From assembly GCF_002113885.1 (NCBI RefSeq), contig NW_018407731.1:260863-324862 (forward strand): DNA of 64,000 nucleotides. The letters run 5' to 3'. Under the pieces are notes generated by a model. The model saw only the letters and a program-made list of their open reading frames with translations, was not told the DNA's origin and ran no database searches. Of this stretch, positions 5,366 to 62,242 are shown piece after piece. Every line of letters starts with the position of its first letter. The first letter of the stretch is position 1. The position numbers and the translations under genes are program-made. Source of the stretch: Mizuhopecten yessoensis (taxonomy: Eukaryota).

Positions 5366-5781
5366 TGTAACAAGAGAATGAGAAATGCAACGGCCAGACT
5401 CTAGTTCGAACACAGGAGCCTCCAAACTCTACTGTAGACCTATCAATTGAGCACAGGTACTATTAAAGGTGTATTGACAGTCGTGGCTAGTACTTGTGAA
5501 TTGAGCTACCTGGTCGCCGACGATTGACCCAGTCCAGTTCAGCTACTGTACATTTCTCCCTCCTTTTTCAAAGTATTTGCCGACGGAGACGCAATTATTT
5601 ACAACCCAGGTTCAGGTATCCCCTTGCCAAGCATATACCAAATGCTTTAAACAAGGGTTGGCAAGCTGGCCAATTTTGTAGCAGGAGAAAGAGAAATGCA
5701 ACAGCTAGACCCGGGTTCGAACCTGGGACCCTCTGAATTCTTAGACGGACGCTCTACCAATTGAGCTATTCGCCGATGATT
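5366..5781 (-). mobile_element. Near-complete tRNA-LTR TRIM, family B (5' LTR 5781-5677, truncated at its start; internal 5676-5553; 3' LTR 5552-5366)
   Basis: Two direct tRNA-like LTR copies. TGG lies 4 nt after the 5' LTR (5672-5670) and PPT GAAAAAGGAGGGAGAAA (5569-5553) abuts the 3' LTR TGTA. CATG flanks both sides (5362-5365, 5782-5785). Confidence 0.85.
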
Positions 5782-5785
5782 CATG

Positions 5786-6015
5786 TTGATCGGCATTTAA
5801 GGCCCAGATACATTCATTCCATTTTATATGGTCTTTAGCTGTTGTCCTTGCTGTTCCATCCAAGTGCCGTTCTTTTTGTCTCGACAGTCTGTCTCAAGGT
5901 GGTTTTGGGTCATCCAACCTTCCTTTTCCCTCTGGTTACCATGTCAGTGCCACTGAACATATACTGTTGGTATCCATTCTTAGTACATGGCCCATCCATC
6001 TCCAACGCCGTTCCA
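5786..6015 (-). mobile_element. Degenerate 3' fragment of an RTE-like non-LTR retrotransposon ORF
   Basis: Minus-strand translation RRWRWMGHVLRMDTNSICSVALTW*PEG.RKVG*PKTTLRQTVET resembles the RTE-clade C-terminal motif (W.GHVLR...ALTW.PEGKR..GRPKTTW), with stops. Confidence 0.75.
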
Positions 6016-32826: not shown

Positions 32827-32960
32827 TGTAGCGAAACTGGACTGGGTCGATCATTGGCGACCTGACGTAGCTCAATTGGTTAGAGTGCCCGATTAGAGTT
32901 TGGAGGGTCCTGGATTCGAACCCTGGTCTGGCCATGCATTTTCCCCTCTCCTTAGTTACA
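32827..32960 (+). mobile_element. Solo LTR of family B tRNA-TRIM
   Basis: TGTAGCGAAACTGG...tRNA-like...AGTTACA; flanks CTTC/CTTT (3 of 4 match); homologous to 61282-61410 and 5366-5552. Confidence 0.82.
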
Positions 32961-49070: not shown

Positions 49071-50791
49071 CTAATCCCTGCAAACTTCTCACTGGCACTA
49101 CTATCACATACCATGAACGGTACAAATCTATTTCCACCAGTTGATAAGAATTTGTAAAGGTGAGGCCAGTTTATTGAGGGAGATACATAAAGTACTTAAG
49201 AAAAAAGAAATATGGAACTTTGACAGATATTGTCAGTAAGTGAGGAGGCAGATGAAAAGAGGAGCGTGAATGTGCCCTCATGCAATGATAAAAAGGGCAG
49301 AAAGAAAATCAGATAATATTTTGGTCTTTTTACTTTTTAACACATTGGTTACATGTAAATCATGCTGTATATATTTGTGCCATATAAATGTGTACTTTAT
49401 ATTAAATGATGTTTTTGCTTAAGTACCAACCAGGTATGTCTGTAAATCACATTTGTTTTGAAATATATTTATTTCATGTTTTTAATTCCTGCTGAAATTC
49501 AAGGACTCAAGGATATTACGAGTGCCTTCCTGATACAAAGAATCAGAACAGTTCTGTCACTCTTTCATGAACTGAAATTCCCACAAATTTCAACAAAGTT
49601 TGAAAAATAATCATAAAAAGAAGTATTATTAAAAAGATAAGTGAATATATAATTTCTCCAATCATAAAAAAAATTCATTGAAAAAGATAAAAGTATTTTG
49701 TAAAGTGCAATAGGTTGTAAAACATTAGATATATTGATGTTTAATTTTATTACATACATATGTACATCTAGTCTGCTTAAAATGATATAACAATATGAAA
49801 GTGACAGTTTAAATAATACAATATGTAGTATATTAATATGAACTTTGAATACTTGTGATAGTATCCTGGTACAGATGTATAGTGAGGTGCTGTGATTGTT
49901 AAGATCAGTCATGTTCTACAAATTGTGATTGTTGTAGCTCTATGGATGCAGATAGCTTAAATCTAGTCCCGTTGTTGTTGTTTTCAGTAAATGTTTGGTT
50001 TTTGTTTGATTTGTTTTCACGGACATGCGGCTTTGAGGTGCGACGACCTCTTACAAAGTATGTACATTGCAGTACACATTTGCCTTAGATGTTCAAAATA
50101 GTATTATACAATTAGATACACATGTAGTTATATTATATATCTGTCGGTTAGTCTGGTGTAGTGGATTGGTATCCTGAATTAGTAACCTCTAATGTCAATT
50201 AAATTGTTTGTTAATTTTATATACTTTACATATAGGATAATCATGTATTTGAAATATTTTCACTGAGGTTAATAGTAAGTTAACAATTGCTATACTCAAT
50301 GATTTATTAGTGGATAAGATTGCTGATGATTATTGTGATATTATAAATGCCCCCTTTGCCAGGATGTATCACAACATAAAATTATTTAAATATGCAAAAT
50401 TAATATATATTACTATAACCGTAGAATAGAACAAATATTGTTAAAATTATAAATTTTATATTAATTTTGAACACTAATTATTTGGTGATAAATCAAAATA
50501 TTAATGGAATGGTGCTAACAATATGAAATCTGTTTTAACTTGCCTCAAAAGGGCCAAGCTCGCCCCAAAAGGGCCAAGTTAGCTTACACCATGGTGCAGC
50601 GTCTGTCATCAGTTAATCTGTTGTAACTTTCCCTTTATACACTACTAGTCCAGCACAGCTCAGTGGATTTAGACTTCTTTTGGTCTTGAACATCTTTAAT
50701 AGTGCCAAGGAGACACGTCAGTGTATACATGGAGGTTGTATAATCCTTCTTTGGGGCAGAGGGGTGTAGGGTCAAATAGGGGAGTTATGTA

Positions 50792-50995
50792 TGTGGCAGG
50801 GTTCAATTGTACATAGGATTAAGGTCACCTTCTAGCTTAGAGCTAGAGGGAATTTCCCTTCAGCTCAGTTGTAGAATTTCCCTTTAGCTCAGTGGTAGAA
50901 TTTCCCTTTAGCTCAGTGGTAGAGTGTCCGACTAGGAACCAGGAGATCGAGGGTTCGATCCCCGTCAGAAGCACACTATTCTCTTTCCTGTTACA
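50792..50995 (+). mobile_element. Solo LTR of family A tRNA-TRIM, with a triplicated 24-bp A-box segment
   Basis: TGTGGCAGGG...CTGTTACA with perfect TSD TGTA (50788-50791 and 50996-50999). Length 204 = 156 + 2x24. Confidence 0.92.
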
Positions 50996-51166
50996 TGTAC
51001 ATTCTTATGTATATGACAATCTTTAAAATCCTACTCCATAAGTACTGTAAAGGAATATTATCCTGACATGGTCTGGAGCATCCTTGGGCCAAGGGGAGTC
51101 AACTTTGTAACATGAAGGGTGTTGTCCGCTATAGGAGAAGAAAAGTTAGGATTAGGTTCAGGGGGG

Positions 51167-59399: not shown

Positions 59400-61281
59400 C
59401 TTGGCTTCTTGGTCCCAAACTCATTAATGCTCGGAGACACAGCTTCTAAAAAGAAAAGAAAGAAGATATTGACATTTAACATGTACAGGTACATGTAGAT
59501 CAAAAGACTTTTTCATACTATTCTGTGCCTTTACACAACAGAGAAATTCCCTAATATATTATCAATAGATAATTATTTTTTTCTCTAACATGATGTGTAA
59601 AAATAATGTCAAAACAAATTATATAGTTACACTAGCCAATGCAAATGACAATAACCTAGTCGCTCAAAACTGCAAATTAAACGCATTCTGAATTCCCTCC
59701 AGTATTTTAGGAAATATATATGTTGCTTTTCTATTGTAACAAAATGGTCTGATTATTATTGTGTAGGTAATTAATGAAAAAGTATAGAAACATTTATGTA
59801 TTGTAAAGTATAAAGTATTATTAGAGAGCAGCACTTTGGTCAAAAGTTCAAATCCTATAATCCGTCTAAAGCTGTGCCTTGGTTGACACAGACTGTTGCA
59901 GAGGTAGATAGTCCAGGCAAGCACATCCATGGCAGTTACAATGTAGGGGAGCGGCCACAGGGTTAAAATTAGAGATAACTATAGAAAATAAGACGGGATC
60001 TCTCTCAGAGATAGAGAGAGAGTGAGAGTACTCCAAGATAGGGCTATGGTCTCTGACTGTTATGGCCACAATTTGAAGTTAATTAACAAGAAGTCAACAA
60101 TGAGTTGTTCAGTGTGCTATATAATACTATGTTAGACCGAGTCACAATAGATTGAATTTTATTTCGACTCAGGAGCCCATCGGGTAAAATACAGATAAGA
60201 AAAAGGTAAAAAGGCTGTTTCCTATCTGCGTCATTGCATTTTTTCCGGCACTGAAGTAAACTATATAGATGCAGGGTAAGCTACTATAGGTTCTTGTGTG
60301 TTCAGGATCTGTGTGGAAGGCCCAAGTAGTATAGCAGAAATAGGACTGGATAAATTACCTGCCACCATACAGACCTACTGTAGGTCCTGTTGGTAAAAAC
60401 ATATGTTTATGCGTTTAAGAGTCCAAATTGCAAATATTGTTAATTAGACCATGCCAAATCAGAACAAAATTCCTTTGACCTAAATTAGAAAAGAAGTCTT
60501 CAAAAGGTTAACCCCCTATACTAGTATTTCCCCTTTTTGGCCCTGCCTTATGCTTGAGTACTAATATTGTTGATGTGTGAAAGCTAAAGGAATATCAAGG
60601 AAACCAGCCGTATCCATCTCTGTGTTTCCTGCTGTACCCCAAAGTGGGAGAACTTTTCAATATACACCTTAGCGGCATGTTGGTAGGTCAAGGTCATTAA
60701 CTTGAGGAAACTTTATGCTGTATATTCTATCCAACCATGCCACTGGTCAAATACTATCACCCTGGACCTACTAGTAATGTTGAAGGAGTTGTTTCAAGGT
60801 TCTTTTAACACATTTGACCCTTGTGATCATGAAGTAATATTATGTCAAGGTCATTTATTAGAGGAAATGATATAACACTCCATCTCAGATACCTTACTGT
60901 CCAAATATCACAGGTTTTCCAGTTCTTAAAAAGAAATCATTCAAAGCAAAAGGTTGGCAGATGGTGAACAAATAACACACCATACCATAAGCTCACTGCA
61001 GGCACTTTGAGAGCTAAAAATGACCAAACATCTTCTCATAAAGAACCAAAATACCTTAAGTCATTGTATCAGCCAATCACTTGCTGAGAAAAATCAAACA
61101 TAATTTGCTCAGGTTCTGCAATATTTTCTTTTTTTTCCGAGATCAGCAAAGGAGCTATTTGCAATTGGTACTGTACCATTAACAGCACAACTCTGAACCT
61201 AGCTGTAGAACCAGGTGGGGATAATGAATGTATAGATAAACAAACTACATGAATGTTGCATTTATTGCCATCTTGGATTAG

Positions 61282-61410
61282 TGTAGCGGAACTGGACTGG
61301 ATCGATCTTCAGCGACCAGATAGCTCAACTGGTAGAGCACCTGTCTAAGAGTTCGGAAGGTCCGGGGTTCGAACCCCGGTCTGGCCGTGCACTTTTCCTC
61401 TCCTGGTTCA
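61282..61410 (+). mobile_element. Solo LTR of family B tRNA-TRIM
   Basis: TGTAGCGGAACTGG...GACCAGATAGCTCAACTGGTAGAGC...GGTTCGAACCCCGGTCTGGCC...CCTGGTTCA; flanks TTAG/TTGG (3 of 4 match). Confidence 0.82.
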
Positions 61411-61425
61411 TTGGTTCATTGCAGG

Positions 61426-61828
61426 TTTGGCAGGGTTCAATTGTACATAGGATTAAGGTCGCCGTCTAGCTTCGAGCTAGAGGGAATTTCCCTTTAGCTC
61501 AGTGGTAAAGCGTCCGACTAGGAACCTGGAGATTGAGGGTTTGATCCCCGTTGGAAGCACACTATTCTCTTTCCTGTTACAAATGGTGTCTGTGGCCTGC
61601 TCTGTGGTGACAGGGAGTTAGAACCTGGGTTGTGGTGATTGAGGGCGAACACATTTAAAAAGGGGGGAGTAGTGTGGCAGAGTTCAATTGTACATAGGAT
61701 TAAGGTCGCCGTCTAGCTTCGAGCTAGAGGGAATTTCCCCTTAGCTCAGTGGTAGAGCGTCCAACTAGGAACCTGGAGATCGAGAGTTCGATCCCCGGTG
61801 GAAACACACTATTCCCTTTCCTGTTACA
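61426..61828 (+). mobile_element. Complete TRIM (miniature non-autonomous LTR retrotransposon) with tRNA-like sequence in each LTR, family A
   Basis: 156-bp LTRs at 61426-61581 and 61673-61828 (T[G/T]TGGCAG...CTGTTACA; 11 differences). PBS-like TGGTGTC at 61584, PPT AAAAAGGGGGGAG at 61657-61669, TSD CAGG at 61422-61425 and 61829-61832. A-box TAGCTCAGTGG and B-box GTTCGATCC lie inside the LTR. Confidence 0.93.
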
Positions 61829-62242
61829 CAGGTAACACCGTCGTAAGCGTCTAGTCGCTTCTTGAGGTGCTTCTTAATACTGTCCACTTCACTTCAGGTT
61901 GCATTTGTAGGCATTTGAAAAAGACATTTTTCTCAAAAACTAGTGAAAATGATTGACATGTGCAGTGGTTGGTAACAAAAGTTGCATCCTAATTCAATAT
62001 AAAATAAGAGTATTCATTTATAAAAAAAGACTGACAGGCCTGTATAGATCACAAATCTCAAAACAAAAAAAAACAAAAAAAATATTTAGTATGAATACAC
62101 ACATTGTGGTTAAGTTTTTACAGACCTTTCAATGAGCTGTACATGGAAGTATAGATAATAAAAGGTTGCACGAGTTAAAAAATACTGAATTTAGATTGGA
62201 CTAATTTTATTGATGCCGGAAGTCTGTATGTATTACCCCAGC

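What the first reader, a model, noticed from the sequence alone, without database searches (positions are those of the whole stretch)
61426..61828. A 403-bp complete LTR retrotransposon whose LTRs are built around a tRNA-like Pol III cassette
Seen in sequence: two 156-bp direct repeats (about 93% identical) with TG...CA-type inverted ends, a 91-bp non-coding interior with PBS-like TGGTGTC 2 nt after the 5' LTR, a PPT before the 3' LTR, and a perfect 4-bp TSD (CAGG). Each LTR has a hairpin TCTAGCT-TCG-AGCTAGA followed by a tRNA-like segment (D-arm GCTC-AGTGGTA-GAGC, B-box GTTCGATCC). Established: this is TRIM architecture; plant Cassandra TRIMs carry 5S rRNA in their LTRs; and, from memory, tRNA-bearing TRIMs with 4-bp TSDs in animals have been named Helenus, so the class may be known even if this family is not. 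Inference: a SINE-like internal promoter drives an element that borrows RT/integrase from an autonomous partner, probably Gypsy given the 4-bp TSD; TGGTGTC fits a tRNA-Leu primer.
Basis: partly seen in the sequence, partly recalled or inferred. Interest (0 to 1): 0.9.

Follow-up and report, generated by a model that had tools for sequence, protein, structure and literature searches.

The report
Known tRNA-bearing miniature LTR retrotransposon
This is a real 403-bp non-coding LTR retrotransposon whose repeats carry a tRNA-like module, but it is an old copy of Helenus-2_MiYe, a family already published in 2024, apparently from this same scallop genome assembly, so it is ordinary.

Summary
Two 156-bp direct repeats (145/156 identical) flank a 91-bp interior with a primer-binding site and a polypurine tract, and the whole is bounded by a perfect 4-bp duplication (CAGG).

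The genome holds many copies. At least 44 are full length, and about 400 LTR motifs and 470 interior motifs were counted. Of 23 distinct copies, 19 have perfect 4-bp target duplications, with a symmetrical TA|NNNN|TA target preference. A solo LTR with its own duplication lies in the same window. It is therefore a TRIM, not a duplicated SINE.

It is not new. Two motifs from it occur exactly once in the supplementary sequences of Kojima 2024 (PMC10886601), in Helenus-2_MiYe from Mizuhopecten yessoensis ASM211388v2. Compared by eye, the window copy is 93-96% identical to that consensus.

No tRNA gene in this genome matches the primer-binding site exactly, and tRNA-His fits best. Sister copies carry a perfect 18-nt tRNA-His site.

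Pol III transcription remains untested, because the RNA-seq reads gave no defined starts. The window copy is old, and the B box of its 5' LTR is mutated.

Two other first-stage notes on this genome describe similar elements elsewhere.

The parts
61422..61425 (+). Left copy of the 4-bp target-site duplication (CAGG)
   Evidence: It is identical to 61829-61832.
61426..61581 (+). 5' LTR, 156 bp. It begins TTTGGCAG (mutated from TGTGGCAG) and ends CTGTTACA.
   Evidence: It shows 6 differences by eye from the published Helenus-2_MiYe LTR.
61465..61481 (+). Hairpin in the upstream part of the LTR: TCTAGCT-TCG-AGCTAGA
   Evidence: The same hairpin is in the 3' LTR. Related published families carry variant stems at this place (by eye).
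61488..61557 (+). tRNA-like segment of the 5' LTR. The A box TAGCTCAGTGG (61495-61505) is intact. The B box at 61538-61548 reads GGTTTGATCCC (C to T at 61542).
   Evidence: RF00005, 19.5 bits against a 29-bit gathering score. ARAGORN does not call it.
61582..61672 (+). Non-coding interior, 91 bp: AA linker, PBS, GAACCTGGGTTG motif, hairpin, PPT
   Evidence: It shows 6 differences by eye from the published 89-nt Helenus-2_MiYe interior.
61584..61597 (+). Primer-binding site TGGTGTCTGTGGCC. Most family copies read TGGTGTCCGTGGCC.
   Evidence: tRNA-His fits best, with a 1-nt bulge and one mismatch. No tRNA gene matches exactly.
61635..61652 (+). Hairpin just upstream of the PPT. This copy reads GTGATTG-AGGG-CGAACAC and is weakened. 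19 of 23 family copies fold the 7-bp stem.
61657..61669 (+). Polypurine tract AAAAAGGGGGGAG
   Evidence: It is conserved in nearly all copies.
61673..61828 (+). 3' LTR, 156 bp, TGTGGCAG...CTGTTACA. Its tRNA-like segment is 61735-61804 and its B box is GTTCGATCC.
   Evidence: It shows 7 differences by eye from the published LTR.
61829..61832 (+). Right copy of the 4-bp target-site duplication (CAGG)
50792..50995 (+). Solo LTR of the same family in the same window. It is 204 bp because a ~25-nt piece around the A box is triplicated. Its TSD is TGTA (50788-50791 and 50996-50999).

Best explanation
Window 61426-61828 is one old, probably inactive copy of Helenus-2_MiYe. This is a terminal-repeat retrotransposon in miniature (TRIM) of the Helenus/'TRIMp3' class, described by Kojima (2024) from the Yesso scallop Mizuhopecten yessoensis. 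It encodes nothing.

Proposed mechanism, step by step:
1. RNA starts inside the 5' LTR. It is proposed, not shown, that RNA polymerase III starts at the tRNA-derived A and B boxes.
2. The RNA runs through the interior and the 3' LTR.
3. A reverse transcriptase supplied in trans primes minus-strand DNA from a host tRNA bound at the PBS. That tRNA is most likely tRNA-His.
4. The polypurine tract primes the plus strand.
5. An integrase that recognises the TG..CA ends inserts the DNA with a 4-bp staggered cut, preferring TA|NNNN|TA sites.

Shown here: the anatomy, the copy family, the TSDs, the target preference, solo LTRs, tandem LTR-interior arrays, the spread of ages, and identity with the published family. 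Inferred: Pol III start, tRNA-His priming, and a Gypsy-type helper.
For: Anatomy.

Family: 44 full-length matches at 92-95% identity among only 40 candidates scored out of 1969. The LTR motif occurs 402 times and the interior motif 467 times, with 0 in the controls.

Integration: 19 of 23 distinct copies have perfect 4-bp TSDs, against a chance of 1/256 each. Among those 19, the flanks read T (14) A (13) before the TSD and T (12) A (15) after it.

Other LTR-element hallmarks: a solo LTR with a TSD, and arrays of 3-4 LTRs at a 247-bp period.

Age: LTR pairs range from 92.9% to 100% identical, with a median of 98%, and 4 of 23 pairs are identical. The window copy, at 92.9%, is among the oldest.

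Identity: a 17-mer and a 14-mer from the element each occur once in Kojima's DataS1, both in Helenus-2_MiYe-LTR. Table S1 lists that family for M. yessoensis ASM211388v2 with a 4-bp TSD.

Primer:
- The genome has 16 loci ending GTTCGAATCCTGGTCACGGCA; two of the three sampled are called tRNA-His-GTG by ARAGORN.
- 11 dispersed loci carry the same LTR end, the AA linker and a perfect tRNA-His PBS.
- In the three such loci fetched (L085-L087) the match to tRNA-His runs 18-19 nt, the length copied from a tRNA primer.
- Kojima aligns this family's PBS under tRNA-His.

Helper type: one locus joins this LTR and a tRNA-His PBS to decayed RVT_1 and Integrase_H2C2 pieces in RT-then-IN order.
Against: - The PBS of this family (TGGTGTCCGTGGCC) matches no tRNA gene exactly, yet copies with identical LTRs carry it. 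The primer assignment is therefore not clean.
- There is no run of four or more T in the LTR or the interior of the window copy (read), so there is no canonical Pol III terminator.
- Even the youngest copies score 27.2 bits on the tRNA model, below the 29-bit threshold.
- RNA-seq reads laid on the locus come from other copies. Almost none are 99% or more alike, mates lie equally on both strands, 84-98% of the raw reads run on into unlike sequence, and no place shows a pile-up of starts.
- No intact autonomous partner was found.
- The comparison with the published consensus was made by eye.
Confidence: 0.93

Rival explanations
1. The element is a TRIM, but the tRNA-like module is a passenger, such as an old SINE insertion fixed in the LTR. 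It would not be the working promoter. The template RNA would come from Pol II or from read-through of host transcripts.
For: There is no T4 terminator in the element. The tRNA-like part scores below the Rfam threshold even in young copies. RNA-seq reads containing the family mostly continue into unrelated flanking sequence and show no defined 5' ends.
Against: The A and B boxes are kept in young copies, and according to Kojima across bivalve families for hundreds of millions of years. Read-through RNA that starts outside the LTR would not give a usable strong-stop transfer. The libraries laid are ordinary RNA-seq libraries that capture short Pol III products poorly, so the blank is weak evidence.
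Confidence: 0.2
2. It is a locally duplicated ordinary tRNA-derived SINE: two SINE copies side by side, moved by a LINE.
For: Each repeat contains a tRNA-like head. tRNA-like repeats are very abundant in this genome.
Against: The same two-repeat unit, with the same 91-bp interior, PBS and PPT, occurs at dozens of unrelated loci with 4-bp TSDs that bracket the whole unit. It has TG..CA ends and no poly-A or simple-repeat tail. Solo repeats carry their own 4-bp TSD.
Confidence: 0.01
3. It is a unit of a 247-bp tandem repeat (satellite) rather than a mobile element.
For: Arrays of 3-4 LTRs with a 247-bp period exist. Arrays with a 216-bp period exist for the neighbouring family.
Against: Most copies are exactly one LTR-interior-LTR unit, at dispersed sites, with TSDs. 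Such short arrays are a known by-product in TRIMs; Kojima reports tandem arrays for LTR-11_DR.
Confidence: 0.01

Closest known systems
Helenus-2_MiYe (Kojima 2024, Biology 13:119, PMC10886601; Mizuhopecten yessoensis ASM211388v2)
   Same: It is the same family. The LTR is about 95.5-96% identical and the interior about 93% identical by eye. Both have the same hairpin, tRNA-like core, PBS TGGTGTCCGTGGCC, PPT and 4-bp TSD.
   Different: The published LTR is given as 158 nt ending ..ACACA, and the interior as 89 nt. In the genomic copies the TSDs fit an LTR of 156 nt ending ..ACA, followed by an AA linker. This is a small boundary difference. The window copy is decayed: its 5' end reads TT, its B box is mutated and its pre-PPT hairpin is weakened.
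Helenus-5_PeMa (Pecten maximus) and Helenus-4_ArIr (Argopecten irradians)
   Same: These are clearly related LTRs. They share the start TGTGGCAGG/TGTAGCAGG..TTTTAATTGTACATAG, the CTAGC hairpin, GGGAATTTCCCTTTAGCTCAGT and the end ..CCTGTTACA. For Helenus-5_PeMa, whose interior was seen, a tRNA-His-type PBS, the GAACCTGGGTTG motif, a hairpin and a PPT are also shared.
   Different: They come from other scallop species. Their anticodon-arm region is diverged, and their PBS reads TGGTGCCGTTGACC / TGGTGCCGTAGACC rather than TGGTGTCCGTGGCC.
Cassandra (plant TRIM with 5S rRNA in the LTRs) and Ajax (nemertean TRIM with 5S)
   Same: They share the design: a miniature LTR element with a small-RNA-gene-derived Pol III promoter in each LTR.
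   Different: Their module derives from 5S rRNA rather than tRNA, their TSDs are 5 bp, and Cassandra has a conserved Pol III terminator. This element has none.
tRNA-derived SINEs (SINE2)
   Same: They also have a tRNA-derived head with A and B boxes, are short and non-coding, and occur in high copy number.
   Different: SINEs have no LTRs, PBS or PPT. They are moved by LINE target-primed reverse transcription, with variable TSDs and A-rich or simple-repeat tails.

Membership tests
Helenus (tRNA-bearing TRIM, 'TRIMp3') | Two direct LTRs with TG..CA ends flanking a short non-coding interior, with total length in the TRIM range (311-1263 bp for Helenus) | tested here: met
   The LTRs are 156 bp, the interior is 91 bp and the total is 403 bp. 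Family termini are TGTGGCAG..CTGTTACA.
Helenus (tRNA-bearing TRIM, 'TRIMp3') | A tRNA-derived sequence with box A (TRGCY..YGG) and box B (GGTTC) inside each LTR | tested here: met
   RF00005 aligns over its full model length in both LTRs (19.5 and 20.4 bits; 27.2 bits in young copies). The A box is TAGCTCAGTGG. The B box is GGTTCGATCC in young copies and in the published consensus; in the window copy it reads AGTTCGATCC in the 3' LTR and GGTTTGATCC in the 5' LTR.
Helenus (tRNA-bearing TRIM, 'TRIMp3') | A PBS just after the 5' LTR and a PPT just before the 3' LTR | tested here: met
   The PBS is AA+TGGTGTC(C/T)GTGGCC and the PPT is AAAAAGGGGGGAG, in 20 or more copies.
Helenus (tRNA-bearing TRIM, 'TRIMp3') | 4-bp TSDs in animal members | tested here: met
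   19 of 23 distinct copies have perfect 4-bp TSDs. The window copy has CAGG and the solo LTR has TGTA.
Helenus-2_MiYe specifically | Sequence identity to the published consensus | tested here: met
   There are unique exact hits of a 17-mer and a 14-mer in DataS1. By eye, differences from the published sequence number 7/156 (3' LTR), 6/156 (5' LTR) and 6/89 (interior) (against 1, 7).
Helenus (tRNA-bearing TRIM, 'TRIMp3') | Transcription from the LTR's Pol III promoter | tested here: inconclusive
   Reads from three raw-read RNA-seq runs and the contigs of one metatranscriptome run gave no defined starts, and the reads came from other copies. This is also unproven in the literature.
Helenus (tRNA-bearing TRIM, 'TRIMp3') | Mobilisation in trans by an autonomous Gypsy-type element | tested here: inconclusive
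   Only one decayed chimera was found, joining a Helenus-2 LTR and a tRNA-His PBS to RT and IN pieces (L085). Four related pol copies could not be fetched.
tRNA-derived SINE | A single tRNA-derived head, a LINE-like or A-rich tail, variable-length TSDs, and no LTR, PBS or PPT | tested here: not met

The most novel reading that the evidence does not exclude
The family is known, but three details seen here are not in the 2024 paper and could bear on how TRIMs are recognised by their helpers.

1. A 6-9-bp hairpin with a purine-rich loop sits immediately upstream of the PPT. Between families the stem sequence changes while pairing is kept: GTGTTCG/CGAACAC here against GTCTTCG/CGAAGAC in the neighbouring family, and other stems in published bivalve consensuses. 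A conserved GAACCTGGGTTG motif lies beside it. Together they may be the cis signal for packaging or for plus-strand priming by the helper.

2. The PBS of this family persists in young copies although it matches no tRNA gene exactly. This is unexpected if the PBS is recopied from the primer at each cycle.

3. A chimera of this LTR and a tRNA-His PBS with a Gypsy-type pol may mark the helper lineage through a template switch in a shared particle.
Probability: 0.25. Interest if true: 0.35.

Novelty: already known. Interest (0 to 1): 0.1.

Why it matters
It matters little as a discovery. Both the class (Helenus/TRIMp3) and this exact family (Helenus-2_MiYe) were published in 2024, apparently from the assembly that this window belongs to.

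It has practical value for annotation. These elements, and the neighbouring family even more so, are easily scored as tRNA genes or as pairs of SINEs: the neighbouring family's LTRs pass the Rfam tRNA threshold at 50-53 bits.

The open biological questions are whether the tRNA module really drives Pol III transcription, which tRNA primes, and which Gypsy element helps.

Tried and rejected
Only TGGTGTC would pair. Patterns requiring a canonical T-loop followed by ..CACGGACA gave 4 hits against 4 in the control, and none of those sampled was a tRNA. Patterns requiring ..GGACA gave 37 hits against 29. No tRNA gene gives 8 nt or more of contiguous complementarity. Rejected in favour of tRNA-His with a bulge.
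- **First tRNA-His pattern.** It was swamped by an unrelated repeat of about 2100 copies. A tighter pattern then found the 16 tRNA-His-type loci.
- **Autonomous partner.**
  - A search for the LTR end plus a perfect tRNA-His PBS found 11 dispersed loci and one 37-bp tandem array.
  - Of the three loci fetched, two are shorter TRIM variants. One (L085) is an LTR-PBS joined to decayed RT and IN pieces, with no 3' LTR within 8 kb.
  - Four other copies of that pol match only from 34 nt after the LTR, so L085 is a one-off chimera or deletion, not a family with this LTR.
- **RNA evidence for a Pol III start.** Inconclusive.
- **Ratio of solo to full copies from motif counts.** It is not interpretable, because the interior motif (467) is shared with sister subfamilies and outnumbers the LTR motif (402).
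- **Tool alignment to the published consensus.** The comparison was made by eye.
- **Consensus.** No consensus of the copies was built.

Full report
**1. What is in the sequence**

The window holds two direct repeats, at 61426-61581 and 61673-61828. Each is 156 bp. They differ at 11 positions with no gaps (92.9% identity).

Between them lie 91 bp (61582-61672) with these parts:
- an AA linker;
- a PBS-like TGGTGTCTGTGGCC (61584-61597);
- a GAACCTGGGTTG motif;
- a weakened hairpin (61635-61652);
- a polypurine tract AAAAAGGGGGGAG (61657-61669);
- the trinucleotide TAG.

CAGG stands directly on both sides (61422-61425 and 61829-61832).

Each repeat holds the hairpin TCTAGCT-TCG-AGCTAGA. About 60 nt into each repeat is a segment that Infernal aligns to the whole tRNA model at 19.5 and 20.4 bits, below the 29-bit gathering score. 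ARAGORN does not call it.

The 5' repeat now starts TT instead of TG. Its B box reads GGTTTGATCC. Its D-arm reads GGTAAAGC.

**2. It is a mobile family, and an LTR-type one**

A search of the window's own genome (987,588,634 bases in 82,659 contigs) returned 44 full-length matches at 92-95% identity. Only 40 of 1969 first-look candidates were scored.

A 24-nt LTR motif occurs 402 times and a 24-nt interior motif 467 times, allowing up to 2 mismatches. Neither occurs in the reversed-pattern controls.

Among 23 distinct fetched copies, 19 have a perfect 4-bp duplication directly outside TGTGGCAG...CTGTTACA. Chance would give 1 in 256 per copy. The four exceptions are:
- one copy with its flank in an assembly gap;
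- two copies whose right end, as set by the script, falls inside a longer array or beside a further interior;
- one four-LTR array without a TSD.

Among those 19 copies the flanks show a symmetrical preference. T (14/19) and A (13/19) precede the duplication, and T (12/19) and A (15/19) follow it. That is what an integrase making a 4-bp staggered cut would leave.

None of the copies has a poly-A or simple-repeat tail. Some loci hold three or four LTRs alternating with interiors at a 247-bp period.

The window itself holds a solo LTR of the same family at 50792-50995, with its own duplication TGTA. A ~25-nt piece around its A box is triplicated.

**3. Age**

LTR pairs within single elements range from 92.9% to 100% identity, with a median of 98%. 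Four of 23 pairs are identical. The family has therefore been active over a long span and until recently.

The window copy, at 92.9%, is among the oldest. It has lost the terminal TG, the invariant C of the 5' B box, and part of the pre-PPT hairpin. Three of its 11 LTR differences are CpG-type transitions.

**4. It is already published**

Kojima (2024, Biology 13:119, PMC10886601) defined Helenus as TRIMs with a tRNA-derived sequence in the LTRs. The paper reports 4-bp TSDs in animals and 5-bp TSDs in fungi and plants. It reports 51 families in pteriomorph bivalves, including Mizuhopecten yessoensis.

A 17-mer (the LTR hairpin) and a 14-mer from the window element each occur exactly once in that paper's sequence file. 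Both lie in Helenus-2_MiYe-LTR. Table S1 lists Helenus-2_MiYe for assembly ASM211388v2 with an LTR of 158, an interior of 89, a total of 405 and a TSD of 4.

Reading the printed consensus against the window by eye gives these differences:

| Part | Differences from the published consensus |
|---|---|
| 3' LTR | 7 of 156 |
| 5' LTR | 6 of 156 |
| Interior | 6 of 89 |

This comparison was not run through an aligner.

The match also implies that the window comes from M. yessoensis or a very near relative.

One small discrepancy remains. The published LTR ends ..ACACA and the interior starts at TGG. In the genomic copies the TSDs fit an LTR ending ..ACA, with an AA linker before TGG.

**5. Which tRNA primes**

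I searched the genome for tRNA genes with a canonical T-loop that end in ..CACGGACA or in ..GGACA.
- The first pattern gave 4 hits against 4 in the control, and none of those sampled is a tRNA.
- The second gave 37 hits against 29 in the control.

No tRNA gene therefore gives more than about 7 nt of contiguous complementarity.

The genome has 16 loci ending ..GTTCGAATCCTGGTCACGGCA. ARAGORN calls two of the three sampled tRNA-His-GTG. Against the complement of tRNA-His-CCA, the family PBS TGGTGTCCGTGGCC has one extra T and one mismatch.

Three further points favour tRNA-His:
- Kojima aligns this family's PBS under tRNA-His, and the sister families in other scallops read TGGTGCCGTTGACC.
- Eleven dispersed loci carry the same LTR end, the same AA linker and a perfect TGGTGCCGTGACCAGG.
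- In the three of those fetched, the match to tRNA-His runs exactly 18-19 nt. By established retroviral knowledge, that is the length copied from a tRNA primer up to the modified A58.

tRNA-His is thus the best-supported primer for the lineage.

One point is unexplained. The imperfect PBS persists in copies with identical LTRs, although plus-strand strong-stop synthesis should often rewrite it to the primer's sequence.

**6. The helper**

The 4-bp TSDs and the published PBS similarities point to Gypsy-type elements.

One locus (L085, contig C2051) joins a Helenus-2-type LTR, 93% identical to the window's, and an 18-nt tRNA-His PBS to decayed coding pieces. Those pieces match RVT_1 (E = 4.5e-14 and 2.4e-7) and Integrase_H2C2 (E = 4.4e-18), in RT-then-IN order. 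No gag or RNase H domain was detected among the ORFs, and no 3' LTR or PPT is recognisable within 8 kb.

Four other copies of this pol exist, but they match only from 34 nt after the LTR. L085 is therefore a single chimera or deletion, possibly a template switch between co-packaged RNAs. It is a lead, not a demonstration.

**7. Transcription**

The A box (TAGCTCAGTGG) and the B box (GGTTCGATCC in young copies) are spaced as in a tRNA gene. Even the youngest copies score 27.2 bits on the tRNA model, so the module is tRNA-derived but not a tRNA.

Neither the LTRs nor the interior of the window copy contains a run of four T (read). A Pol III transcript would then end in flanking DNA. By inference this need not prevent replication, because minus-strand strong-stop DNA can transfer to the internal copy of the same LTR segment in the 3' LTR.

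Reads from three raw-read RNA-seq runs, and the contigs of one metatranscriptome run, were laid on 61150-62050.
- Almost no raw reads are 99% or more alike, so the window copy itself is not detectably expressed.
- Most of the raw reads are 90-95% alike and continue into unlike sequence.
- First mates lie equally on both strands.
- No place shows many molecule ends.

A sister subfamily, whose LTR starts TATGGCAGGTTTTAATCTG, is well represented. Its reads span the PPT-LTR junction. This shows that RNA containing such elements exists. It cannot tell a Pol III start from read-through, and such libraries capture short Pol III products poorly. Kojima likewise states that promoter function is unproven.

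**8. Details not in the paper**

The paper does not mention hairpins.

In 19 of 23 copies a 7-bp stem, GTGTTCG-AGGG-CGAACAC, folds immediately upstream of the PPT. The neighbouring family has GTCTTCG-GGGT-CGAAGAC at the same place, a G:C to C:G exchange. The published consensuses of other bivalve families show different stems at the same position (by eye).

The GAACCTGGGTTG motif beside the hairpin recurs in families with different LTRs. These may be cis signals for the helper. This is inference and was not tested further.

**9. Verdict**

The tRNA-Leu primer is not supported. The Pol III promoter and the Gypsy helper remain inference. Both the class and this very family are already known, so the novelty is nil and the interest is low.

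Two other first-stage notes on this genome (s1-514851, s1-507958) describe similar elements on other pieces. I did not check them.

Noticed in passing
window 61282-61410 (+), 15 bp upstream of the element: This is a solo LTR of a second tRNA-bearing TRIM family. Its flanks read TTAG and TTGG. It contains the only ARAGORN tRNA call of the window (61313-61388, 'Leu-AAG', Rfam 39.7 bits). Elsewhere in the genome the family is an element of about 346 bp: LTR ~130 bp, PBS TGGCGCCCAACG (tRNA-Lys type), PPT AAAGGAGGGAGGAA, 4-bp TSDs and arrays at a 216-bp period, with 2268 first-look candidates. By eye it resembles Helenus-1_ArIr of Argopecten irradians. It is not among the four families that Kojima lists for M. 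yessoensis. Its LTRs pass the Rfam tRNA threshold (50-53 bits) and are called Ser, Tyr or Leu by ARAGORN, so they would inflate tRNA gene counts.
   Followed up: partly
window 50792-50995 (+): This is a solo LTR of the same Helenus-2 family with a perfect TGTA duplication. A ~25-nt segment around the A box (GAATTTCCCTTyAGCTCAGTkGTAGA) is repeated three times.
   Followed up: partly
window 5381-5830 (-) and 32828-32952 (+): These are further decayed Helenus-type pieces. One has LTR-PBS (TTGGCCAGCTTGCC..)-GAACCTGGGTTG-PPT-LTR. The other is a lone LTR about 80% identical to the second family. Together with the others, the 64-kb window holds at least five such pieces.
   Followed up: no
L085 (G000:C2051:780900-788900), LTR at 370-524, PBS at 527-544: A Helenus-2-type LTR and a perfect 18-nt tRNA-His PBS are joined to decayed Gypsy-type RT and integrase pieces. 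No gag, RNase H or 3' LTR was found. Four other copies of the pol (C2268, C5426, C3892, C5260) lack this junction. It may be a template-switch chimera that marks the helper lineage.
   Followed up: partly
L086 (G000:C5462) and L087 (G000:C5535): These are shorter sister TRIMs. The LTR and AA linker are followed by a perfect 19-nt tRNA-His PBS, which runs directly into the pre-PPT hairpin and the PPT. The interior is about 60 nt.
   Followed up: partly
G000:C4990:619802-620233: This is a 37-bp tandem array with 12 matches listed. Its unit is the last 21 nt of the LTR and linker plus 16 nt of a CpG-decayed tRNA-His PBS. RNA-seq reads show the same joint ('goes back 21' with CTGTGACCAGGATTTG between).
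   Followed up: no
genome-wide: There are about 2100 copies of a tRNA-like motif GTTCGAGTCACGGCACGGCA. This is another high-copy tRNA-derived repeat, which was not identified.
   Followed up: no
RNA runs X23 and X24 laid on window 61446-61666: A sister subfamily whose LTR starts TATGGCAGGTTTTAATCTGCATAGG is strongly represented in two transcriptome runs. Hundreds of its reads span the PPT-LTR junction, with 98-99% agreement.
   Followed up: no
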